Part shown: in pieces, positions 51,681 to 64,000 of the stretch
Layout: every line of letters starts with the position of its first letter
How positions within the stretch are numbered: position 1 is the stretch's first letter
Assembly: GCF_021869535.1 (NCBI RefSeq)
Contig: NW_026262604.1
Coordinates: forward strand, 6,262,001 to 6,326,000
Direction: 5' to 3'
Source of the DNA: Mytilus californianus
Lineage: Eukaryota
DNA: 64,000 bases
Notes under the pieces: generated by a model
What the model saw: the letters and a program-made list of their open reading frames with translations, nothing else
The model's database searches: none
Told to the model about the DNA's origin: nothing
Position numbers and translations under genes: made by a program

Positions 51681-52435
51681 AAGGCATATATTGACAATTG
51701 AGCACAAGTTAACAAAAATTAAAGACCATAATTATACAAAAATTTATCATAGCACAATGACACAATGACGGGATGTATAAGTATAGAGCCACGTCAAACG
51801 TACATGTATCAAAGAAATACAAAAAGGTATATAGACAAAGCACATTTAAATTAGCAAAAATAAAAGACAAGAATACAAAAATTATCATAGAAAGTTAAGA
51901 GTGTTAAAAAAATAATTGTGTGTTATGAAGGCAAATAAACTAGATAAACGCATTCAATGTATTGCATTGTGTATATTGTTTTTAACTTATGGTGAATGAT
52001 AATCAACTTATTCTAATACTGTTTCTATCAACAGCAATCGAATGCATTGCACAATATTGTTTACCTGGTGCTCCATATGTATTTTTGAAATTGATTATCG
52101 CCCTTTAAGAAATGTAACCATTGTAAAAGAAACAAAAACACATGACAAAGAAGGTTTGTTATATTCATTGATATTTTTCATTTTACATCCAAATTTTATG
52201 CATAGAATTACGTGCGGTTGATAAAGTGTTGAGCAGGGTTCATCATGAACTTTTGGATAATATGAGCGTATAGTATTTACACCACACATCTGAGACAGAT
52301 ATAAGGAGGTTTTATCGATGACGTCATCTCGGTTCTATTTTTAAATCCGGGGAAGTCTGGCCGTCAATCGGCCATTTCCGTTCGGCGCCATGTGACTGAA
52401 ACGGAAGTCTGCAGTCGTCTGTTTACTAACAAACC

Positions 52436-52650
52436 ATGGGTAAAGTGTGCGTAGTGTTAGGTTGCCGAAATCGAGATAGTCACAAACAGCCAGGAATCAA
52501 ATTCCACAGGATTCCAAAAGATGAAGAAAGAAAACAGCTTTGGATAAAGGCAATAAACCGAAGGGACCCTTTATTCTTTAACAGGAAAAGTTTGGATATC
52601 TGGTGACGAGGGAGCCAGAGACAGAGTGTGCAGTGAACATTTCATTGATG
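52436..52650 (+). pseudogene. THAP-domain first exon of the transposase, frameshifted by a 7-bp insertion
   Basis: MGKVCVVLGCRNR..KFHRIPKDEERKQLWIKAINRRDPL / TGKVW..DRVCSEHFIDG; CTTTA-TT-CTTTA duplication at ~52568-52581 shifts the frame; GT donor at 52651. Confidence 0.85.
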
Positions 52651-52942
52651 GTAAAAATTAAAAGCAATGCTTTATCTTAACCCTTTAAAACATTGCATAT
52701 GTATTCCAGTTCTTGTTATATCCATTTTACATCTAAACTTCAATGCATAAACAACGTGTCGCAATTTTTCTGACGGGCACTTGTCTCAAATATATATATA
52801 TAACAACAATGATGTTTACGACTTTAACCAGTTTACAATTTACCATACCTGTTAACATAAAAGTAAGTATAGGTATCTATTTATTCAATATTTTTATGGG
52901 TTTTTAAAACTAGTTCACTCCTTATAAATTACACAGACCTGT

Positions 52943-53293
52943 ATACACCTAATCGCTATTTATTCCATTCCGGATAAGTTCTAAAATTACACAACTTTTT
53001 CATCCAGTTGACGCTATCTGGGACCCTGTTTAAACAATGCACCATGCATGATACTTTTTAATGAGACCTGTTTAAAACATCGTAAATACTTCAAACACAA
53101 TATTTTTTTTACTTTAATTTGAGTTTGGAAAAAGTGGATCATAATCTATCAAAGTTTCCTATTGATCGCTTTCTAAATTTTTCCCTCCCTCAGCTCGTTA
53201 CTGATGACCTTTGTTTGCGGCCTGTTGACCCAAACAGGAAGTTGTCTAAATGACTGTTTTTTCCGGATTGGACTAAATAGCGATAAGGTGTAT
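52943..53293. mobile_element. 350-bp MITE sharing TIRs with the 175-bp AT-flanked family but with a different interior
   Basis: ATACACCTAATCGCTATTT...AAATAGCGATAAGGTGTAT. Confidence 0.8.
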
Positions 53294-53862
53294 AGTGTAG
53301 GTAGTACAAGGACTGCCATTGACATTGTTTGTTGGAATTGACATGAGGTCTTGAGGACAAGGCTATGGTTTGTATTTTAACATATTCTATCATAGGCATG
53401 ATATGGTGTATGGTTTCATGTTTTATAAATGAACCTGCCCCCACACCGATCATTTTCTTTCTTGATTCTTCCTGTTTTGGCCTGGAATCTACTAGCAAGG
53501 GTGGAAATTCACATTTTCAAGGGGAAGTGCTGCCCAATTTGTTTTCATGTTTGGAATTAGTAATTTGTCCACAATTACTCCACAAATTTTATTATGTCAG
53601 ATTGTCCACATATCTAGCAGTGAATATCTTCCTAGCAAAAAGGGAATTATATATAAAATACCATCTTGTTTCTATGTAAACTATGTAAAAGAAACTTATA
53701 TCAATTAGTATCACATTCTCATGATGCTAAAAGGCCATGGAACGAATACTGGTGGTACCTGTTGTGTTGCTCTTGTTCAAACCCTGTGATAAGTCTAAAT
53801 TGGTAGGTCACATTCAGGGTTAAGGGCGCAAGATTAATAACATAAACAGTACCAATTTTTCT

Positions 53863-53906
53863 GCACCAGATGCGCATTTAGACAATCAATGTCTCTTCAG
53901 TGATGC
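53863..53906 (-). ncRNA. Minimal type I hammerhead ribozyme motif, probably inactive (G12U)
   Basis: On -: GCAUCA CUGAAGA GAC-AUUGAUU-GUC UAA AUGCGCAU C UGGUGC. Stem I 6 bp, stem II 3 bp, palindromic stem III, AUC cleavage triplet. Confidence 0.75.
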
Positions 53907-54237
53907 TCGAGGCGAAAATATTTGAAAATCCAAAGCTTATTAAAAATATAAAGAGTTAGAGAAAAAGATGACTGTGCAATGACAAAATAATGGGCATTCA
54001 CAGATAAAGTACTGTGAAAGTGCATATATGTGTATAACAATAATATTTGGTATGGTTTTGATTTAATTGCTAATAACATTTTTCTATGTCTGTTTTTTTG
54101 AGACGCTAACTGACATATAAAAGGATTATCATATGTCCTAATAACGTTTGATCCATTAAATTCAAGACTGCTACATGTATCTTCAAATTTGACAATTGAC
54201 ATATATTTTCAATGTTAAACATGTTAAATATATACTC

Positions 54238-55317
54238 TTTTTTGTCGAGCCTTCGACTTTTGTCGAAAAAGCGAGACATAGCGATCCTACATTCCGTTGG
54301 CGTCGTCGTCGGCGGCGGCGGCGTCCACAAATATTCACTCTGTGGTTAAAGTTTTTGAAATTTTAATAACTTTCTTAAACTATCCTGGATTTCTACCAAA
54401 CTTGGACAGAAGCTTGTTTATGATCATAAGATAATATTCAAAAGTAAATTTTGTAAAAAAAAAAATCCAATTTTTCCGTATTTTACTTATAAATGGACTT
54501 AGTTTTTCTGCCAAGAAACATAACATTCACTCTGTGGTTAAAGTTTTTGAAATTTTAATAACTTTCTTAAACTATCCTGGATTTCTACCAAACTTGGACA
54601 GAAGCTTGTTTATGATCATAAGATAATATTCAAAAGTAAATTTTGTAAAAAAAAAAATTCCATTTTTTCCGTATTTTACTTATAAATGGACTTAGTTTTT
54701 CTGCCAAGAAACATTACATTCACTCTGTGGTTAAAGTTTTTGAAATTTTAATAACTTTCTTAAACTATCCTGGATTTCTACCAAACTTGGACAGAAGCTT
54801 GTTTATGATCAAAAGATAGTATCCAGAAGTAAATTTTGTAAAAAAAAAATTCCATTTTTTCTGTATTTTACTTATAAATGGACTTAGTTTTTCTGCCATG
54901 AAACATTACATTCACTCTGTGGTTAAAGTTTTTGAAATTTTAATAACTTTCTTAAACTATCCTGGATTTTTACCAAACTTGGAAAGAACCTTGTTTATGA
55001 TCAAAAGATAGTATCCAGAAGTAAATTTTGTAAAAAAGTAAAAAATAAATTCCATTTTTTCCGTATTTTACTTGTAAATGGACTTAGTTTTTCTTCCAGT
55101 TAACATTACATACAGTCTGCACTTTAAGTTTTTAAAACATTTATTAGATTGATAAACTATCCTGGATTTTTACCAAACTTGGACAGAAGCTACTTACAAT
55201 CAAAAGATAGTATAGAGAGGAATATTTTTATTAATTTTTTTCCTCATTTTTGTTGAGCCTGCGATTAACAGCAAAAGTAGGCGAGACACTGGGTTCCGCG
55301 GAACCCTTACGAATTTT
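54238..55317 (+). mobile_element. Complete HINE with ~4.5 x 192-bp core units (same family as 25465)
   Basis: Anchors 54335, 54527, 54720 and 54912; perfect 3' palindrome GGGTTCCGCGGAACCC. Confidence 0.92.
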
Positions 55318-56149
55318 GTTTTTATTCAGATGTTCTTTTTTTATTGTTCTTCTTTCCTTCATAACTGATATATTCTTGGGTTAATTTGTTTTATACATAG
55401 TGTGTAACCAATAGGTCAACTGTAATATATACATGTATTTTCATGGTTTGTTAGTTAATGTTAAATTTTCGTACTTTGGTCTGTGTCTCAAATACTACAT
55501 GTATAAGCAGTATGTGAAAGTATTGATGGTATAAGGTGTAGGTATCTCTGTGTCAGGATTCATATGACCTTGCTCCTTATTGACGATTTATTAACAACAT
55601 TTTAATTTTATCGTTGATCTTATATAATGCATTTTTAAAAAATGGCCATCAATTTTTTAATTGTAACTTCAAGTTATATTTCCTTCTCTCATTCTAACTA
55701 AGGTGTGAAGGGACAATGTGACCTCTTCATCTTATGGCATGTTGCAATGAACGAGCAGAATGGTTTTGGACTTCTAATGAAATAAAATATATAGCGGAAT
55801 GTGAACCGGTTTAAGATGAATACTTAGGGAGCTACCATTTGATTTTTATGGGGGGGGGGGGGGGGGGGCTAGGATGAAAAATTTTGTCCTGCATTTTTTT
55901 TTAGTTGTAATCTTTGTCCTACATTTTTATTTTTCACTCTATTCAGTCCTGCATTTTTTTTGTTAGTTTATCCTGACTTTTTTTATATAAATTGTCATCC
56001 TGCCTTTTTTTTGCTCAAAACTCCTGTCTTGCCTTTTTTCAAATCTCATCCTTTTTGTTGTTTGGATGTACAAGTACCCGGCCAAGTCCACATGTATTTG
56101 TAGTATTTGTATTTTTATCCATCTGATGAGTTAAGCCTCTTTCAACTGA

Positions 56150-57356
56150 TTTTTGTCGAGCCTGCGACTTTTGTTGCAGAAAGCTCGACATAGGGATAGT
56201 GATCCAGTGGCTACAGCGGCGGCAGCGTTATCTAACTTCTTAAAAGCTTTATATTTTAGAAGGTGGAAGACCTGTATGCTTCATACTTTGTATATAGATG
56301 CCTTATGTTATGAAGTTTCCATCTGTCACATGTCCATTGTCCTTGACCTCATTTTCATGGTTCAGTGACTACTTGAAAAAAAGTTAAGATTTTTTGTAAT
56401 GATAATTTCTCTCTTACTATGAATAATAGGATAACTATATTTGGTATGTGCGTACCTTGCAAGGTCCTTATGCCCGTCAGCCAGAATTCCCTTGACCTCG
56501 ACCTCGTTTCATGGATCAGTGAACACGGTTAAGTTTTGGTGGTCAAGTCTATTTCTCAGATACTAGAAGCAATAGGTCTAGCATATTCGGTGTATGGAAG
56601 GACTGTAAGGTGTACATGTCCAACTGGCAGGTGTCATCTGACCTTGACCTCATTTTCATGGTTCAGTGATTATAGTTAAGTTTTTGTGTTTTGGTCTGTT
56701 TTTCTTATACTGTATGCAATAGGTCTACTGTATTTGGTGTATGGAATGATTGTAAGGTGTACATGTCTAGCTGGCATGTGTCTTCTGACCTTGACCTCAT
56801 TTTCATGGTTCAGTTGTCAAAGTTAAGTTTTTGAGTTTTTGGTATTTTTTTCTAATACTATATGCAATAGGTCATCTATATTTGGTGTATGGAAATATTT
56901 TATGTTGTACATGTCAGTCTTGCAGGTTTGACCTTGACCTCATTTTCACGGTTCATTGCTCAGTGTTAAGTTTTTGTGTTTTGGTCTGTTTTTCTAATAC
57001 TATAAGCAATAGGTCAACTATATTTGTTGTATGGAAGGATTGCAAGCTGTACATGTCTGCCTGGCATGGTTCATCTCACCTTGATCTCATTTTCATGGTT
57101 CATTGGTCAATGTTTAGTTTTCTTGGTTAAGCCTGTATCTTAGAAACTATAAACAAAAGGTCAACAATATTTAGTGTATTGAATGATTGTAAGGTGTACA
57201 TGTATTTCTTGTTTGGTTTATATGACCTTGACCTCATTTTCTTGGATCATGTCAAGTGTTTGTGATAGTTGTAGTAAAGCTTTATATTTAGGACTATCAA
57301 CATAATATCAATGATTAGTAAAGAAGGCGATACATTTCAGCGTGTGCACTCTTGTT
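56150..57356 (+). mobile_element. Complete HINE (GACCTTGACCTCATTTTCATGG core) inserted into an interspersed repeat
   Basis: TTTTTGTCGAGCCTGCGAC start, GGC tract, repeated core; ends AAGGCGATACATTTCAGCGTGTGCACTCTTGTT. Confidence 0.85.
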
Positions 57357-58164
57357 ATAGTTCGTTCTTATGTTGTACTGTTACACCACTGTCCCAGGTT
57401 AGGGGAGGGTTGGGATCCCGCTAGCATGTTTAACCCCGCCACATTCTGTATGTATGTGCCTGTCCCAAGTCAGGAGCCTGTAATTCAGCGGTTGTCGTTT
57501 GTTTATGTGTTACATATTTGTTTTTCGTTCATTTTTTGTACATAAATTAGGCCGCTAGTTTTCTCGTTTGAATTGTTTTACATTGTCATTTCGGGGCCTT
57601 TTAAAGCTGACTGTGCAGTATGAACTTTGCTCATTGTTGAAGGCTGTACGCTGACCTATAGTTGTTAATTTCTGTGTCATTTGGTCTCTTGTAGAGAGTT
57701 GTCTCATTGGCAATCATATCACATCTTCTTTTTTATATATCAATTATGGGAAAGTGTTTTAAACAAGATTTAGGTATGAATCAATGTTTTATATCTTTAT
57801 TTATCAGCATACCATATTACACTGTTAAAGAGATACATGTACACACAATAAAAATTACATAATGTACATGTTGTATATGTAGTAAATTTGGTTGATTAGT
57901 ATATTTCTTTTCTCAATAACTATTTATGATCATCATTAAATATAGGACATTTACAAATAGAAAGAAATTCATCTGATATCTCCAGAGTTATACATAAGTA
58001 TTTCATATTATCACTTGCAATATTATGCCATCTACCAGTCTCAACCTACCTAATGTAATAAAATGTTTCTATCATCTTTAGTTTTTAAATAATATTCCAA
58101 TTCACAGTTTTCATTATACATACCATATATATAGTTTACAGCTTTTTTTGATAAAAATAAAAAA

Positions 58165-58392
58165 AGATGTGTGTTTCCTATTACCCTACCCTCCCTATTT
58201 TTTAAGCTCAAAAATAGCCTACCCTAAAGTTTTTTTGTTGTCATTTTTCAGTTTGCACTTTTAAAGTCAGAATGTCCCTCCCATAGACTCAATGTAATAA
58301 AAATGGTAAAATAAAAAAAAAAACCTACCTACCTACCCTTTTTTTTTCAAAGATGTAATAGGAAACACACATATTATTTTTTTTTTTTGGCC
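58165..58392. mobile_element. Copy of the GGCC/TAA MITE (left GGCC missing)
   Basis: Aligns with 19815-20034. Confidence 0.8.
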
Positions 58393-58666
58393 TTAGATAT
58401 ATTATAAGTCTTTTATTAGGCCAAATAAAATAATAGAAACTTGAGAATATTAATCAACAATTGAATATAAAATACATCTATGATATACTAATTGCAAATA
58501 CTTCAAAAAAATCATTCATTTATAGACAGCAATTCACTAAGTACTAAATTCACAGTAAGTGATGTTGTAGTCTACAGTTACTAATTTGAAAAGAAATACT
58601 TAAAATTTGTATCCAAAGTAAGTTCTGGTTTCAGTTTATTGTAACATTTTCACTATTTTTTAAAAG

Positions 58667-58815
58667 ATATAAAAGAGCTGTTAAAAGAACTGCTGATCAA
58701 AAGGAGAGAGAATGCAGAATGCAGTTGGACTTATTGATGACAGCTGATGGCAAAGAAAATGATCATCTGCCATTACAAGACTTAGACTGCAATGTAGACA
58801 TGGAAGACAAAAATG
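58667..58815 (+). CDS. Putative internal exon of the transposase
   Basis: AG/GT bounded and open (YKRAVKRTADQKERECRMQLDLLM...EDKNG); its phase-1 end matches the phase-1 start of the 59834 exon. Confidence 0.5.
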
Positions 58816-59833
58816 GTACCAGAACTTAGTTTACTATTCTTATGTGTTCATAGGGTTAATAATCTTTTTGGACTTGTTGCCTTCAGTTTCTCCATTAATA
58901 ATTTATTAGCAGTTAATTTAAATGCTGCACAGCGTATATTTAAAAAAAAAATGTATAAACATACCACAATGTATTCAATTGCAATAAAATCCATAATCAA
59001 GTAGTGCAATAAACAATGTTTTTTGTACAGAGATGAAAAGGCAACAAATTTATCATACATTTTATATTTTTCCTAGGACTCTATGTAGAAAGCTTAATAT
59101 ATCATCAGTATTAATTTTGCACATTGGTTAAGGCTGTATGGTACCTATACATGTACTTGTTAATATTTTTTGATGTTTTAATCCCTGTCTACTGCAAACT
59201 ATTTCTTTAAAATGTTAGTACGAAAATAATGAGATGTGGTATGATTGCCAATAAGACAACTAATCAAACAAACAAACAAACACACACACACACGCTTAAT
59301 TTACCGCAAAGGAAATTCTAAAAGCAAATATGACATACATGAACCAATCATAACCACTGAACTATAGGCTCCTCACTTGGGACAGACACAAGCTCATTTA
59401 CAATGGATAAATGTCAATTTTATTCAGAAAATAGACCATGCACTTGTAAAAACAACTTCTTGATATATGACACCAACCTTCATCAGGTTATGCTGTTCCT
59501 TGTGACACTTTTCAGTTACTTTGATGTTTATATAGATGGAGTTTAATTCATCCTTTATTAGTATCCAAAAGCTCAAAGTGAATCTGGTTTTCTTAATTGG
59601 AAAACTGCAAATTTGATATATAATTTAGACATTTTTATAAAAGTAAAACAAGGAAATGATTTTATAGTACAAGTTACATTAAGTTTACAAGCCACACAAA
59701 AGTAAATTATTTCAGTAAAAGTCATTTGACCCTTATCATGCTTATGTAATTTAAGAAAAGTTTCAAGTGTCCTTGTTGCCAAATGGAAATGTTTATAGCA
59801 TTTTTGGTTAATTTATAACTCTTTATATTTCAG

Positions 59834-60828
59834 GTAAAGGAGAATATGAAAATTGCAGTATATTATTAAAAAATGCCATAAGTGAAAACAAAATCCTAAT
59901 AGATCAACTTCAACAACTGCAGTTAGAAAAAAATGTTTTAAATAATAAACCACCTTATATGAGGGCTTCTAGTCTATCCCTGGAGAAAACAGAAGAAACA
60001 ACAAAATTTTATACCGGATTGCCATCTTATACATGTTTTATTTGGTTGGTGAACTTTGTGACCTGTATTTTACCTTCTTCCAATATTTTGAGTTCAGCAG
60101 ACATTCTTCTTTTGGTTTTAATGAAATTACGTTTAAATTCTCCACATACTGATATCTCATTTCGTTTTGGAGTTTCTCTTAGTTTAGTTACCAATTTAAT
60201 TGACAGTGTCATCCCTCAATTAGCCCACAAATTAAAATGGTTGATTCATTGGCCAAATAAAGATGATATTTTACGCTCTAGACCAGACTGCTTTAAGGAG
60301 GCCTTTCCCAGATGTGTTTCTGTTATTGACTGTACAGAAGTTTATATAGAGACTCCATCAAATTTTACAGCCAGATCTTGTACTTACAGTAACTATAAGC
60401 ACCACAATACAATTAAGTTTTTAGTCAGTATTGTTCCGTGTGGAAGTATTTCTTTTGTTTCACGTGCATTTGGGGGGAGGACTTCAGATAAATTGATTTC
60501 TCTTAAATCTGGTTACCTTGACTTTATACATCATGGTGATGTTGTCCTAGCAGACCGTGGCTTTCTTATTAAAGACGAATTAGCATCGAGAGGGGCTGAA
60601 TTAATTATACCATCATTTGTAAAGGGAAAAGACCAGCTAAGTGCCTTTGAAGTGGAAAGAAGCCGAAATATTGCACATGTAAGAATTCATGTTGAAAGAG
60701 AAATGGAACGACTGAAAAATTTCCCTATTTGGTCTGGAAAGATGTCATTGAATATGGTGCCACATTCTGACAGTATCATGACAATTTGCTCTGCTATTAT
60801 AAATATGCACCCTAATATTGTTCAATAA
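59834..60828 (+). CDS. Terminal exon of Harbinger/ISL2EU-type DDE transposase (DDE_Tnp_4-like nuclease preceded by an HTH-like region)
   Basis: Acceptor TTTCAG at 59833, in frame with ORF 59959-60828; motifs VIDCTE, TYSNYKHHNTIKFLV, GGRTSD, LADRGF and RIHVER, with the D-D-E triad intact. Confidence 0.92.
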
Positions 60829-60860
60829 CAAATTAACACATTTCCCTTGATTATAGGTAA

Positions 60861-61166
60861 GGCCATTGAAAATTTAATATTGGTTTCCCCTAACACAAGA
60901 AAATTTTAAAAGGTCAGCAGGCAAGAAAAACTTTATTTTTCTATTATTGTAGTTCAAAATATCTACCAGACTACAAGAAAAATGTTGACATCATATCTGA
61001 TCTATATTGTGATGTCACCTACTTTAAACTTGAAGAATGATAAATAAAACATTATTTTGAGAAATGGTCAGACAAGGATCATTTATAGTTTAAGAGCAAG
61101 TATTACTGGAGGGTGAAAACAGACCCAACAGACTTTAGGTAAACCAACAATCTTTTTTCCATGGCC
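60861..61166. mobile_element. GGCC-terminated MITE with TAA/TTA flanks
   Basis: TIR GGCCATTGAAAA..ATTGGTTTCCCCTAA versus GGCCATGGAAAA..GTTGGTTTACCTAA. Confidence 0.78.
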
Positions 61167-61599
61167 TTAAAATTACTAATTTTCATATCTCATCATGTAC
61201 ATAACAACATGTTTCTTGTTGTTTTGTCTAGCCAACATTGACTTTTAAAACAAATTCAATTTTTGATATCTGTATTCAAATTCAAGAAGTTATTGTAGCA
61301 AAAATTGCTGAGGCATCACCGAAAGATAATTGTTCTGCAGATTTTTTTGTTCAGCATTATTATTTTTCAATGAATCTTATAAGGTGCTGAAAAATATTGG
61401 TGTCTGACATTTAAATAAACAGTAGAAGGAGTATTGTTATTACTAGGTATACTTGTTTTTCATTTACTGTAAAGCTTTTATGAAAAATTGACCATATAAC
61501 CTATTAAGAAACTCCCTCACTTGATTTTGAGACTTACAACTCTTTACACTTTTTTTTTTGGAATATGCCTTTTGCAGATACATACAATGCACCCATAAT

Positions 61600-61750
61600 C
61601 AGAAAAGGATTAAGGGTGGGGCAGGGTGTCCCCTCTTTTGTTTGAAAAAATTTGGTTCATTATATAGGAAATCACTGAAGCATGACTGGAGCTGGCCCCT
61701 CTAAGGCAGTCAGTGCCCCCTCTTTATGATAATTTCTGGATCCGCCAATG
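61600..61750. mobile_element. Inverted CAGTGGCGGATCC-family MITE with 5-bp TSD
   Basis: ATAAT on both sides. Confidence 0.8.
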
Positions 61751-62157
61751 ATAATATATTTCAAAAAGATTTTTTTTTATTTTTGTTAAGAATGTATCCT
61801 TATCCAGTTTCAGATAAATGTTCAATTTATCTACAAAATTAACAATATCAAATTTATAAAAAAAAATCCAAAATCTTATGAGAACCTCGCAATACACTTG
61901 AAGTTGTTATTATGTTAATTTTGGAACAGATTGAAAGACTAAAAAATCGTTGTGAAATTAATTCTGGAAAAAAAAATTCTTTTGAAAATATGATGTAAAA
62001 ATTTTTCAATTATAATGGATAAATGAAAATCCAGAATCCTAAACTAAAATTGTCTAGAAAAAATGTATTCAAGTATTAAGTGGTACACCAAGTGTTATCC
62101 ATGCTTCAAGAAGAGGTTATTTTGTAAATATGTTTGATGGCACACTACTTCCACAAA

Positions 62158-63372
62158 TTATTTTTTACATTTTGGACAAAGCCACTTTCCCCTTGGTTTC
62201 CTTACAATGTTAACACATTGATAATGGAACCATCCAATATCACATGAGTCTCCATCACAAAAAATCATCTTGCCATATTCTGGTTCTTCACACAAGCAAT
62301 ACTTCTCTTTTGTGACGTCATTGACTGAAGTGTTGGCTACTTTATAATCATGTAGCAATTTCCTGGTAAGTAGCTCTGGGATTAATAGCTCTTTAACAAA
62401 GTAAGTGCACTTACTTATTAAATGATTACAAAACTCAGGATCCCTGCAAATTCTAACAATAGCAAGCAAAATAACATCATTAGGACTTGTCATTACAACA
62501 AAATCACAATAATCAGTGTCATAGACAAACATCTGTAACTGAACCTGAGTGTAATATTTGTGGTTATTTTTCAAGTGTAAGTTTGTGTCCAAACAAAATG
62601 TAGGGTCTTGATTTGCAGCTTCTATTGAAGTTTTGTCTTTATGCTTGTGGGGACATTTAATCTCAAGGGTTCCTTGTCCACAACAATTGCATGAAATCAC
62701 ACCATCAGCTGAAGCACCAAGAAAATAATTTTTTTCAGATATCTTCAACCCAGATAATTTACACTCAAAATTTGTATGTTTTTTTTCCATATATTGGATG
62801 TAGGCATCTCTGGTTGTTGCTTCATTTTCCAGCCCCCATTTTATGGCCTCTTTTTTACTGAGATCATATGAGTTGTATCCTGCAAGTCTCATGATCAATT
62901 TATTAGGATTTGTAGTTGGTCTTAATGTTAAAACCTCATGAGCTTTTGAAGCTGTTATTCGACCTTTTCTGTGTTCAAACCAAAGGGTACTTATATTTTG
63001 AGATTCAGTAATTTTGAATAAATTTGCAGATTGAGAAGTTGAGCAATGATAGTTCCTAAAAAGTTGATCTGATTTGTTGATTAATTCCTGTTCAGTTAGT
63101 TCTTTATTAATGACATCATAATAACTTGTAAGAGGTCTAGGTAATTTTTCTTCTTTTGTATGTTTAACCTTGACTGATGTTTCTCTAGTTACTTCATCAT
63201 TCATTGGAGGCATGAGAGAAAAGAATGCAGCATTAGGACACACCTTAGAGAAAGATTCTAACACATCTTTGCCTGGTAATGGATCTTTGCTTGATGGTAT
63301 AACACATTCCAATTTTTTTTTTCTGTTACTGTTCATAAGGTGCTGTATATCCATAATTGAGCTGACATCAAC
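62158..63372 (-). CDS. Terminal exon of YqaJ/lambda-exonuclease-domain protein with C-terminal PHD finger
   Basis: WFEHRKGRITAS, WGLENE, LGASADG, LEIKCP and YYTQVQLQM (PD-(D/E)xK); YCLC..MIFCD..C..GWFHYQCV..KWLCPKC (PHD); in-frame acceptor TTAG at 63373. Confidence 0.92.
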   Translation of the reverse strand, partial: VDVSSIMDIQHLMNSNRKKKLECVIPSSKDPLPGKDVLESFSKVCPNAAFFSLMPPMNDEVTRETSVKVKHTKEEKLPRPLTSYYDVINKELTEQELINKSDQLFRNYHCSTSQSANLFKITESQNISTLWFEHRKGRITASKAHEVLTLRPTTNPNKLIMRLAGYNSYDLSKKEAIKWGLENEATTRDAYIQYMEKKHTNFECKLSGLKISEKNYFLGASADGVISCNCCGQGTLEIKCPHKHKDKTSIEAANQDPTFCLDTNLHLKNNHKYYTQVQLQMFVYDTDYCDFVVMTSPNDVILLAIVRICRDPEFCNHLISKCTYFVKELLIPELLTRKLLHDYKVANTSVNDVTKEKYCLCEEPEYGKMIFCDGDSCDIGWFHYQCVNIVRKPRGKWLCPKCKK

Positions 63373-63621
63373 CTAACAACACAAAGATATCAATTTTTAG
63401 CTTACCGGCCCAAAAGGCCAAGTGAGATTTTCCCATCTCTTGGCATCTGTCGTCGTCCATTAACTTTACCACAAATCTCTCTGTAATTACTGGGCCAAAT
63501 TTAAACAGACTTTTGAGTTATCTTTCCCTTGTTGAGAGTTTTTCGGACTGTTTAAACTCAATTTTAAAGTAAAAACAGTTAAGTAACAGAGTCAAGTATT
63601 TATTAAATAATTCTTTTTTTT

Positions 63622-64000
63622 TTTGTATGCTTTACAGTTTCTGTACATAAATAACTTGAGAAAACCAGTGTTGTATTTTCAACTTATACAAGACTCCAAC
63701 CTTAATTAAGAATTAATAAGTGTTATCACTCTTTGTACACCTGATATAGACTACACTTGATAACTTTGTATAGTTTATTGTACATGTATTATTGTCTTAT
63801 TAATCATTATAATCAGTTGAAAGATTTGCAAGTGTTTGTGAATAAGTTATATATTTTTTTCATGCTTGTAATGATTCATTTGTTTAATAAGTTTATTGTA
63901 AAGTTGAAGTGACATAACTTTTTGTATGCTTTACAGTTTCTGTATATAAATAACTTGAGAAAACCAGTCTTGTATTTTCAATTTTATATACAACACTCCA
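63622..64000. repeat. ~80-bp direct repeat, ~297-bp spacing
   Basis: TGTATGCTTTACAGTTTCTGTA.ATAAATAACTTGAGAAAACCAGT at ~63625 and ~63923. Confidence 0.75.

What the first reader, a model, noticed from the sequence alone, without database searches (positions are those of the whole stretch)
62158..63372. Transposon accessory protein fuses a lambda-type exonuclease to an ING-like H3K4me3-reader PHD finger
The YqaJ catalytic motifs (ASADG, EIK, Q..Q) are intact. The C-terminal PHD (YCLCEEPEYGKMIFCDGDSCDIGWFH) keeps the Tyr, Met, Asp and Trp positions that form the trimethyl-lysine cage in ING-family PHDs. A YqaJ gene beside a THAP-DDE transposase is the known ISL2EU layout. The inference is that the partner couples end processing to recognition of active promoter chromatin, conceptually like the RAG1/RAG2-PHD pair. 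I am not aware of this being tested.
Basis: partly seen in the sequence, partly recalled or inferred. Interest (0 to 1): 0.72.

Follow-up and report, generated by a model that had tools for sequence, protein, structure and literature searches.

The report
Transposon exonuclease with histone-reader finger
The ORF is the last exon of the helper gene of a giant (about 28 kb) ISL2EU DNA transposon in a mussel genome, and it fuses a lambda-type exonuclease to an ING-like PHD finger whose methyl-lysine pocket is conserved from molluscs to fish, which suggests, untested, that this transposon family reads active chromatin.

Summary
Window 62158-63372 (-) encodes a YqaJ/lambda-exonuclease domain (Pfam E 1.6e-21) followed by an ING-type PHD finger. 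The finger matches solved ING1-5 PHDs at E 1e-17 to 1e-15, and its model superposes on their H3K4me3 complexes at 0.6-0.9 Å.

It is not a whole gene. It is exon 4 of a four-exon gene for a SWIM-like zinc finger, a YqaJ nuclease and a PHD finger. The first three exons lie 12-17 kb upstream, outside the window.

The gene sits tail-to-tail with a spliced THAP-HTH-DDE_Tnp_4 transposase gene, inside a ~28.1 kb element with GGAG termini. I compared five copies of that element, which are 98-99% alike.

The window copy is defective. It has a stop codon in exon 2 and a frameshift in the THAP exon.

Of 120 homologues, 108 keep the PHD core:
- Aromatic at the Tyr position: 98/108.
- Met: 105/108.
- Cage Trp: 100/108.
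- Arg2-pocket Trp: 108/108.
- The ING cage Ser is replaced by Glu or Asp in 87/108.

The same gene pair occurs in killifish. A PHD-less ISL2EU lineage coexists in this genome.

One stranded RNA run shows spliced transposase mRNA but only antisense or read-through coverage of this exon.

Histone binding and chromatin-guided transposition remain inferences. No paper in the searched library mentions the PHD.

The parts
52303..64000 (.). Left 11.7 kb of a ~28.1 kb ISL2EU-type DNA transposon. The element runs on to about 80450 in window-extended coordinates (G000:C24:6314303-6342450).
   Evidence: BLASTN of 40 kb around five copies gives 98-99% identity with sharp common ends. The genome holds 13 left-end and 10 right-end matches.
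52305..52315 (+). Left terminal inverted repeat, starting GGAGGTTTTA and preceded by A/AA. The right end outside the window reads TAAAATCTCC followed by T.
   Evidence: Termini aligned across copies. They begin with GG, as reported for ISL2EU (PMC4482050).
52436..52650 (+). Transposase exon 1, encoding the THAP zinc finger. In this copy it is frameshifted by a 7-nt insertion near 52571 and also carries a 6-nt insertion near 52620.
   Evidence: Pfam THAP E 2.7e-10. The C88 and C154 copies read through in frame, while the C24 copy does not. Three RNA reads whose unmatched parts resemble the exon-1 end, one base different in the consensus, abut 59833/4.
58665..58814 (+). Alternative internal transposase exon (linker), spliced to the DDE exon.
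   Evidence: A GT..AG joint 58814->59833 is seen in contigs of three runs. It keeps the reading frame.
59834..60828 (+). Transposase last coding exon: HTH_Tnp_4 plus the DDE_Tnp_4 catalytic domain. It is open in this copy, with the stop at 60826-60828.
   Evidence: Pfam DDE_Tnp_4 E 4.3e-41 and HTH_Tnp_4 1.5e-11. All RNA reads here have the first mate on the minus strand, which means plus-strand RNA.
62158..63372 (-). Exon 4 (last exon) of the accessory gene, encoding a linker, the YqaJ nuclease and the PHD finger. It is open in this copy. The splice acceptor AG lies at 63373-63374.
   Evidence: tblastn with the 594-aa Mytilus edulis homologue P0001 (92% identity) places residues 191-594 here. 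Residues 1-190 fall on three upstream exons at 80343-80083, ~78053-77885 and 75263-75135 in extended coordinates.
62524..62982 (-). YqaJ / lambda-exonuclease PD-(D/E)XK nuclease domain, with catalytic residues E178, D217, E231 and K233.
   Evidence: Pfam E 1.6e-21. The residues are invariant in 65 homologues. Foldseek matches LHK-Exo and lambda exonuclease at probability 1.0 with target-normalised TM 0.59-0.76.
62167..62301 (-). ING-type PHD finger (C4HC3). Pocket residues are Y352, E359, M363, C366-D367, W375 and W391.
   Evidence: PDB phmmer against ING1-5 gives E 1e-17 to 1e-15. Foldseek gives rmsd 0.6-0.9 Å to ING/H3K4me3 complexes. Residue statistics come from 108 homologues.
63373..64000 (-). 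3' part of the 11.8 kb intron 3 of the accessory gene, which holds nested repeats and tandem arrays further upstream.
   Evidence: Gene model. RNA contigs run unspliced across 63372.

Best explanation
Window 62158-63372 (-) is the last exon of the accessory gene of an ISL2EU-group (PIF/Harbinger-like) cut-and-paste DNA transposon in a Mytilus genome.

The full protein has about 594 residues and three modules:
- An N-terminal SWIM-like zinc-finger domain, encoded by exons 1-3 outside the window.
- A lambda-exonuclease/YqaJ PD-(D/E)XK nuclease.
- A C-terminal ING-type PHD finger.

Its partner is the convergent THAP-HTH-DDE transposase.

Shown here:
- The domain anatomy.
- The four-exon gene model, by homology.
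- The ~28 kb element with GG termini, compared in five copies that are 98-99% alike.
- Family-wide conservation of the nuclease active site and of the PHD zinc ligands and pocket residues.
- The same gene pair in killifish and in other assemblies.

Inferred:
- The nuclease resects or trims 5' ends at the excision or insertion gap.
- The PHD docks on the free N-terminus of histone H3 carrying methylated K4, and so brings or retains the nuclease, and with it the transposase, on active chromatin. This would resemble what RAG2's PHD does for RAG1.
- The conserved Ser-to-Glu change in the cage may relax or shift preference towards H3K4me2.

The copy in the window is defective: a stop in exon 2 and a frameshift in the THAP exon.

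My odds: anatomy about 0.95, binding of H3K4me2/3 about 0.65, a bias in where or when the element moves about 0.3.
For: Domains.

Structure: pLDDT 88.9. The nuclease matches LHK-Exo and lambda exonuclease. The PHD matches ING1-5/H3K4me3 complexes at 0.6-0.9 Å.

An exhaustive search of 1.84 billion representatives with the PHD alone found 906 proteins at E<=1e-10. Most top hits are true ING proteins with the ING N-terminal domain.

Conservation in the 108 of 120 homologues that keep the PHD core:
- Aromatic at the Tyr position: 98.
- Met: 105.
- Asp, Glu or Ser at the Asp position: 101.
- Cage Trp: 100.
- Arg2-pocket Trp: 108.
- Zn ligands: 106-108.

Roles of these residues in ING PHDs come from PMC5000080. 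The few PHD-less rows are scattered singletons on the nuclease tree, consistent with truncated models.

Gene model and copies.

ISL2EU layout in the literature: PMC4482050 and PMC9179366.

The same convergent pair occurs in Fundulus, with the DDE 58% identical and 330 bp downstream, and in ENA contigs.

ESM Atlas clusters of YqaJ+PHD proteins come from Mollusca, Chordata and Arthropoda.
Against: No binding or activity data exist.

The ING cage Ser is Glu here, and the ING Glu before the cage Trp is Gly, so specificity may differ. The BPTF Y17E variant at what I align as the same position prefers Kme2 (the variant's preference is from PMC4589357; the positional equivalence is my own alignment).

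A PHD-less SWIM-YqaJ lineage with its own THAP-DDE partner is multicopy in the same genome. The PHD is therefore dispensable for ISL2EU transposition as such.

In the one stranded RNA-seq run, every read over this exon and its intron comes from plus-strand RNA. That is antisense or read-through, not sense mRNA, although only 6% of the run was read.

The window copy has a nonsense codon and a frameshift elsewhere.

The target-site duplication could not be fixed as AT or TA.
Confidence: 0.7

Rival explanations
1. The PHD does read methylated H3K4, but not for target choice. It senses the chromatin state of the donor copy or allosterically licenses cleavage, as H3K4me3 does for RAG1/RAG2. Alternatively it simply keeps the repair nuclease on chromatin, so insertion sites would show no H3K4me3 bias.
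For: The pocket conservation is the same as for the main reading. The THAP domain on the transposase already supplies DNA recognition. PHD-less ISL2EU elements exist in several copies in the same genome.
Against: Nothing here discriminates target choice from licensing. Both rest on the same untested binding.
Confidence: 0.25
2. The PHD has diverged from ING specificity. With Glu in place of the cage Ser, it binds lower methyl states, unmodified H3, or a non-histone peptide that mimics the H3 N-terminus, such as a host or transposase partner.
For: Ser->Glu/Asp in 87 of 108 homologues, against Ser in about 90 of 145 top hits of the PHD-alone search. The three such hits scanned with Pfam carried the ING N-terminal domain. 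BPTF Y17E prefers Kme2 (PMC4589357). The position before the cage Trp is variable.
Against: Both aromatic cage walls, the Met and the Arg2 and N-terminus pockets are kept. The backbone superposes on ING complexes at under 1 Å.
Confidence: 0.2
3. The gene is a domesticated host gene, or a gene-prediction chimera, rather than a transposon gene. Its closeness to the transposase would then be incidental.
For: Long introns (an 18 kb gene) are unusual for a transposon. Public annotations call the homologues ordinary uncharacterised proteins.
Against: Both genes lie inside one unit with inverted GGAG termini, present in several copies that are 98-99% alike on different chromosomes, with deletion derivatives down to about 200 bp. 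The same pair recurs in fish and other assemblies.
Confidence: 0.03

Closest known systems
ISL2EU group of the PHIS (PIF/Harbinger-ISL2EU-Spy) DNA transposon superfamily (Han et al. 2015, PMC4482050)
   Same: [quoted passage not shown] The termini begin with GG and the insertion sites are A/T-rich dinucleotides.
   Different: It is about 28 kb against a reported mean of about 4.8 kb, and both genes are split by long introns full of repeats. The accessory protein also carries a SWIM-like N-terminal domain and an ING-type PHD finger, neither of which appears in the published descriptions I could search.
ING1-5 / Yng1-2 / Pho23 PHD fingers (H3K4me3 readers)
   Same: C4HC3 fold with 49-57% identity and rmsd 0.6-0.9 Å. 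The Tyr, Met and Trp cage residues, the Cys-Asp and the second Trp of the Arg2 pocket are conserved.
   Different: There is no ING N-terminal domain. The cage Ser is replaced by Glu and the Glu before the cage Trp by Gly. The finger is attached to a nuclease encoded by a transposon.
Lambda exonuclease / LHK-Exo / YqaJ phage recombination nucleases
   Same: The same PD-(D/E)XK fold and the same acidic-acidic-Lys active-site motif, plus the N-terminal R-x-G-R-I-T-A-S motif.
   Different: It is eukaryotic and has no SSAP (Red-beta/RecT) partner gene. It has a conserved extra Cys cluster (C222/C224/C234) around the catalytic hairpin and is flanked by two zinc-finger modules.
RAG1/RAG2 recombinase (RAG2 PHD binds H3K4me3)
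   Same: A DDE-type cutter works with a separate accessory subunit whose C-terminal PHD finger has an H3K4me-type pocket. The resemblance is by analogy only.
   Different: The superfamilies are unrelated (Transib against PIF/Harbinger-like). RAG2 is a kelch propeller without nuclease activity. No functional data exist for the ISL2EU protein.

Membership tests
ISL2EU DNA transposon | Transposase with DDE (DDE_Tnp_4), HTH and THAP domains | tested here: met
   Pfam gives THAP at 2.7e-10, HTH_Tnp_4 at 1.5e-11 and DDE_Tnp_4 at 4.3e-41. RNA reads and contigs splice upstream plus-strand exons onto the DDE exon, and the three read ends resemble the THAP exon end.
ISL2EU DNA transposon | Second gene encoding a YqaJ exonuclease-domain protein | tested here: met
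   Pfam YqaJ 1.6e-21. The gene is convergent with the transposase inside the same repeated unit.
ISL2EU DNA transposon | Terminal inverted repeats starting with GG | tested here: met
   The left end reads GGAGGTTTTA and the reverse complement of the right end reads GGAGATTTTA, a TIR of about 10 bp with one mismatch.
ISL2EU DNA transposon | 2-bp AT target-site duplication (target A|AT|T) | tested here: inconclusive
   Flanks are always A/T dinucleotides. Four of five clean pairs fit AT if 1-2 variable A/T bases are counted as element, but TA fits about as well. No empty site was available.
ING-type PHD finger (H3K4me3 reader) | C4HC3 zinc ligands and the PHD fold closest to ING fingers | tested here: met
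   The eight ligands are kept in 106-108 of 108 homologues. All PDB hits at E 1e-17 to 5e-11 are ING, Yng, Pho23 or Png2. Foldseek gives rmsd 0.6-0.9 Å.
ING-type PHD finger (H3K4me3 reader) | Kme3 cage of Tyr, Ser, Met and Trp (ING3 Tyr-8, Ser-15, Met-19, Trp-31; PMC5000080) | tested here: not met
   Tyr, Met and Trp are kept (Y352, M363, W375) but Ser is Glu (E359). Among homologues the position is Glu 78, Asp 9, Ala 11 and Ser 3 of 108. Three of four residues are met.
ING-type PHD finger (H3K4me3 reader) | Arg2 and N-terminus pocket (Cys-22, Asp-23, Trp-47) | tested here: met
   C366, D367 and W391. Among homologues Cys is kept in 108, Asp in 81 (with Glu 10 and Ser 10) and Trp in 108 of 108.
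ING-type PHD finger (H3K4me3 reader) | Binding of the H3K4me3 peptide | not testable with these tools
ING protein family | N-terminal ING (leucine-zipper-like) domain, PF12998 | tested here: not met
   There is no PF12998 hit on the exon product or on full-length P0001. True ING hits do have it. The PHD is ING-like, but the protein is not an ING protein.
Lambda exonuclease / YqaJ PD-(D/E)XK nucleases | Conserved Glu / Asp / Glu-x-Lys active site and fold | tested here: met
   E178, D217, E231 and K233 are invariant in 65 homologues. The fold matches 3syy, 3sz4 and 1avq at probability 1.0.
Lambda exonuclease / YqaJ PD-(D/E)XK nucleases | 5'-3' exonuclease activity | not testable with these tools
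   This needs an enzyme assay.

The most novel reading that the evidence does not exclude
A large, ancient clade of ISL2EU transposons, found at least in molluscs and fish and possibly in arthropods, captured an ING-type PHD finger onto its exonuclease subunit. It would use that finger to read H3K4 methylation, so that excision, gap processing or integration is tied to active promoter chromatin. That would be an independent, RAG2-like solution in the PIF/Harbinger-like superfamily.
Probability: 0.3. Interest if true: 0.75.

Novelty: new variant of a known kind. Interest (0 to 1): 0.55.

Why it matters
How cut-and-paste transposons choose where and when to move is known for only a few systems. 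The accessory proteins of PIF/Harbinger-like elements are poorly understood. Papers on ISL2EU say the function of the YqaJ gene is unknown (PMC4482050).

A methyl-lysine-reader finger sits on that protein with its pocket under clear purifying selection across phyla. This gives a concrete, cheap experiment: peptide binding, then insertion mapping against H3K4me3.

It also offers a second natural example of the RAG2 logic, in which an accessory subunit reads chromatin for a DDE cutter. For annotation there is a practical point. ING-type PHDs fall just under Pfam's PHD cut-off, so this domain goes unannotated on many YqaJ proteins.

Tried and rejected
- Complex prediction of the PHD with the genome's own histone H3 tail. 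H3 genes were located, but no more genome letters could be fetched, so the job was never sent.
- Target-site duplication. Nine to ten ends were compared. AT and TA fit about equally well, no empty site was found, and the question is left open.
- Sense expression and splicing of the accessory gene. The single read-laying run showed only plus-strand RNA over the exon, and contigs ran unspliced across the acceptor. Exon 3 lies 11.8 kb away, beyond the 6 kb limit, so the joint could not be tested.
- N-terminal domain fold. The model has pLDDT 71. Foldseek gave only a weak ZSWIM8 match (probability 0.97, E 0.02). I call the domain SWIM-like on motif grounds (CxC...CxH, invariant in 15 homologues) and not on fold.
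- Literature. Searches for ISL2EU+PHD, YqaJ+PHD+transposon, YqaJ+SWIM and YqaJ+H3K4me3 found no description of this fusion. Subscription papers and Repbase Reports are not covered.
- PHD-less ISL2EU proteins as an outgroup in the nuclease tree. My motif filter dropped them, so the tree says only that PHD loss within the clade is scattered. It does not say when the PHD was gained.
- Host-gene or chimera reading. I rejected it on copy number and termini.

Full report
**What is at the coordinates.** The minus strand of window 62158-63372 is open for 404 codons, or 398 from the ATG at 63354.
- Pfam finds a YqaJ domain at residues 125-277 (E 1.6e-21). It also finds a PHD finger at the C-terminus, just under its cut-off at 23.4 against 24 bits.
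- Against all PDB sequences, the last 50 residues match the PHD fingers of ING4, ING1, ING2, ING5 and ING3, and Yng1/2, Pho23 and Png2, at E 2e-17 to 5e-11. The next PHD family (Spp1) reaches only 2.5e-05.
- An AlphaFold2 model built on 65 homologues has mean pLDDT 88.9.
- Foldseek matches its nuclease to LHK-Exo and lambda exonuclease (probability 1.0, target TM 0.59-0.76). It matches its PHD to the ING1-5/H3K4me3 co-crystal structures at rmsd 0.6-0.9 Å and 49-57% identity.

**The pocket residues.** For ING PHDs the Kme3 cage is Tyr-8, Ser-15, Met-19 and Trp-31. The Arg2 pocket uses Cys-22, Asp-23 and Trp-47 (ING3 construct numbering; PMC5000080).
- The mussel protein has Y352, E359, M363, C366, D367, W375 and W391 at these positions. 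Six of the seven are kept, and the cage Ser is Glu.
- Of the 120 best homologues, 108 have the PHD core. Among these 108:

| ING position | Residues in the 108 homologues |
|---|---|
| Tyr (cage) | Tyr, Trp or Phe in 98 |
| Ser (cage) | Glu 78, Asp 9, Ala 11, Ser 3 |
| Met (cage) | Met 105 |
| Asp (Arg2 pocket) | Asp 81, Glu 10, Ser 10 |
| Trp (cage) | Trp 100 |
| Trp (Arg2 pocket) | Trp 108 |
| Eight zinc ligands | kept in 106-108 |

- The homologues without a PHD are scattered singletons on a tree of the nuclease domain, as expected for truncated gene models or decayed copies.
- I searched 1.84 billion representative proteins with the PHD alone. It found 906 proteins at E<=1e-10.
- Most of the best hits carry the Ser-type motif. 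The three Ser-type hits I scanned were true ING proteins with the ING N-terminal domain.
- The finger is therefore ING-derived or ING-like, with a family-specific acidic residue in the cage.
- In BPTF, putting Glu at what I align as the equivalent cage position (Y17E) turns the preference from Kme3 to Kme2 (PMC4589357). The Glu may therefore tune methyl-state preference. This is an inference.

**It is a last exon, not a gene.**
- The codons upstream of the ATG stay open to 63372, where a polypyrimidine tract and an AG form a splice acceptor.
- The closest database protein, a 594-residue Mytilus edulis product (P0001, 92% identical over the exon), has 190 more N-terminal residues.
- tblastn places them on three exons at 80343-80083, about 78053-77885 and 75263-75135 in window-extended coordinates, 12-17 kb upstream and outside the window.
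- They encode a domain with an invariant CxC...CxH SWIM-type motif, present in 15 long homologues from bivalves, gastropods and killifish.
- The fold model for this domain is mediocre (pLDDT 71). Its only suggestive PDB match is ZSWIM8.

**The element.**
- Comparing 40 kb around five copies shows a unit of about 28.1 kb that is 98-99% identical with sharp common ends. In the window it runs from 52303 onwards, and its right end lies at about 80450 extended.
- The ends are inverted: GGAGGTTTTA on the left and TAAAATCTCC on the right. The flanks are A/T dinucleotides.
- The genome holds 13 left-end and 10 right-end matches. They include derivatives of 8.5 kb, 3 kb and about 200 bp.
- Near the left end is a THAP exon at 52436-52650 (Pfam 2.7e-10). 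Seven kb downstream is the HTH_Tnp_4 + DDE_Tnp_4 exon at 59834-60828.
- RNA data join upstream exons to the DDE exon in frame. Three raw reads have unmatched parts resembling the THAP-exon end (one base different in the consensus) and abut 59833/4. A GT..AG joint 58814->59833 appears in the contigs of three runs.
- This is the published ISL2EU layout: a THAP-HTH-DDE transposase plus a YqaJ protein, GG termini and an AT target (PMC4482050, PMC9179366). It differs in being about six times the usual size, with long repeat-filled introns in both genes.
- I could not settle whether the duplication is AT or TA.

**State of the copies.**
- The window copy has an in-frame stop in accessory exon 2 (Trp codon to stop). 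It also has a 7-nt insertion that shifts the THAP exon. Its DDE exon and exon 4 are open.
- Other copies differ. One has all recognised exons open, one lacks exons 1-2, and one has a frameshift in the DDE exon and a 21-nt deletion in exon 4.

**Distribution.**
- The same convergent pair occurs in Fundulus heteroclitus. There a DDE_Tnp_4 frame 58% identical to the mussel one lies 330 bp beyond the SWIM-YqaJ-PHD gene.
- It also occurs in several copies in an unnamed ENA assembly.
- ESM Atlas clusters with YqaJ plus PHD come mostly from Mollusca, Chordata and Arthropoda.
- The same mussel genome also holds a second ISL2EU lineage. Its SWIM-YqaJ protein (506-532 residues, single exon) ends without a PHD, next to its own THAP-DDE gene.
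- The PHD is thus a feature of a large clade, not of every ISL2EU.

**Expression.**
- In the one stranded RNA-seq run, with 6% of it read, every read from 59.8 to 64.0 kb has its first mate on the minus strand.
- That orientation corresponds to plus-strand RNA, because the reads over the plus-strand GT..AG-spliced transposase exon lie the same way.
- Coverage continues at similar depth across the YqaJ-PHD exon and into its intron. Contigs of three other runs cross the acceptor unspliced.
- This is transposase sense RNA with read-through that is antisense to the accessory exon. I found no sense mRNA for the accessory gene. One sample cannot show absence.

**Mechanism.**
- Shown: the anatomy and the conservation.
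- Inferred: the nuclease trims or resects 5' ends at transposon or gap ends. The PHD binds the H3 N-terminus with methylated K4. The protein thereby links the transposase to active chromatin.
- Whether this affects target choice, licensing of cleavage at the donor, or repair cannot be told from sequence.
- The RAG1/RAG2-PHD comparison is a fair analogy but not homology.

**Novelty.**
- The element is a member of a known group.
- No paper in the searchable library mentions a PHD or a SWIM domain on the ISL2EU accessory protein. Repbase Reports and subscription journals were not covered.
- Even true ING PHDs score under Pfam's PHD threshold, which probably explains why the finger is not annotated on these proteins.
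- I rate it a new variant of a known kind, of moderate interest. It is a well-supported and easily testable hypothesis, not a demonstrated mechanism.

Note s1-328211 describes the same element at 52303-64000 as a bloated two-gene element with a broken THAP exon. My analysis agrees and extends the element to about 28 kb.

Noticed in passing
window 59143-59323 and 61496-61857: Two nested repeats inside the element are extremely abundant in RNA-run contigs (summed depth 1000-2200 and 120-360, against 4-10 around them). Many loose ends occur at 59222-59232, 61646 and 61692-61699. They are probably short high-copy elements transcribed elsewhere.
   Followed up: no
L044, L045, L046 (G000:C110:81.92 Mb, C165:54.16 Mb, C91:3.76 Mb): A second ISL2EU lineage in the same genome. 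It has a single-exon SWIM-YqaJ protein of 506-532 aa without a PHD, convergent with a single-exon THAP-DDE transposase of about 513 aa, and is partly arranged in tandem.
   Followed up: partly
G000:C86:3201475-3201670; C132:66357143-66360126; C1:54446648-54455194: Deletion derivatives of the 28 kb element that keep both termini: about 200 bp (MITE-like), 3 kb and 8.5 kb.
   Followed up: partly
window 62653-62691 (-), residues C222, C224, C225, C234: A conserved cysteine cluster (CxCC...EIKCPxKH) brackets the catalytic hairpin of the nuclease. It is invariant or at least 90% conserved in 65 homologues and could be an extra zinc site.
   Followed up: no
window 59834-64000 (+ strand RNA): The transposase transcript appears to read through for more than 3 kb across the convergent accessory exon, giving RNA antisense to the YqaJ-PHD exon. 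This could be a substrate for small-RNA silencing.
   Followed up: partly
G000:C88 copy, flanks (L020/L023): The sequences flanking this copy on the two sides are reverse complements of each other over at least 40 nt. The element may have landed in a palindrome or in the inverted repeat of another element.
   Followed up: no
P0121, P0122 (hits): P0121 (288 aa) is made of five ING-like PHD fingers in a row. P0122 (486 aa) has three, plus a faint plant-transposase (Transposase_24) hit. Their origin is unknown.
   Followed up: no
window-extended ~64500-73000 (L014-L015): Intron 3 of the accessory gene contains long tandem arrays with periods of roughly 130 and 400 bp. Copy number differs between element copies and accounts for much of the length differences.
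   Followed up: no
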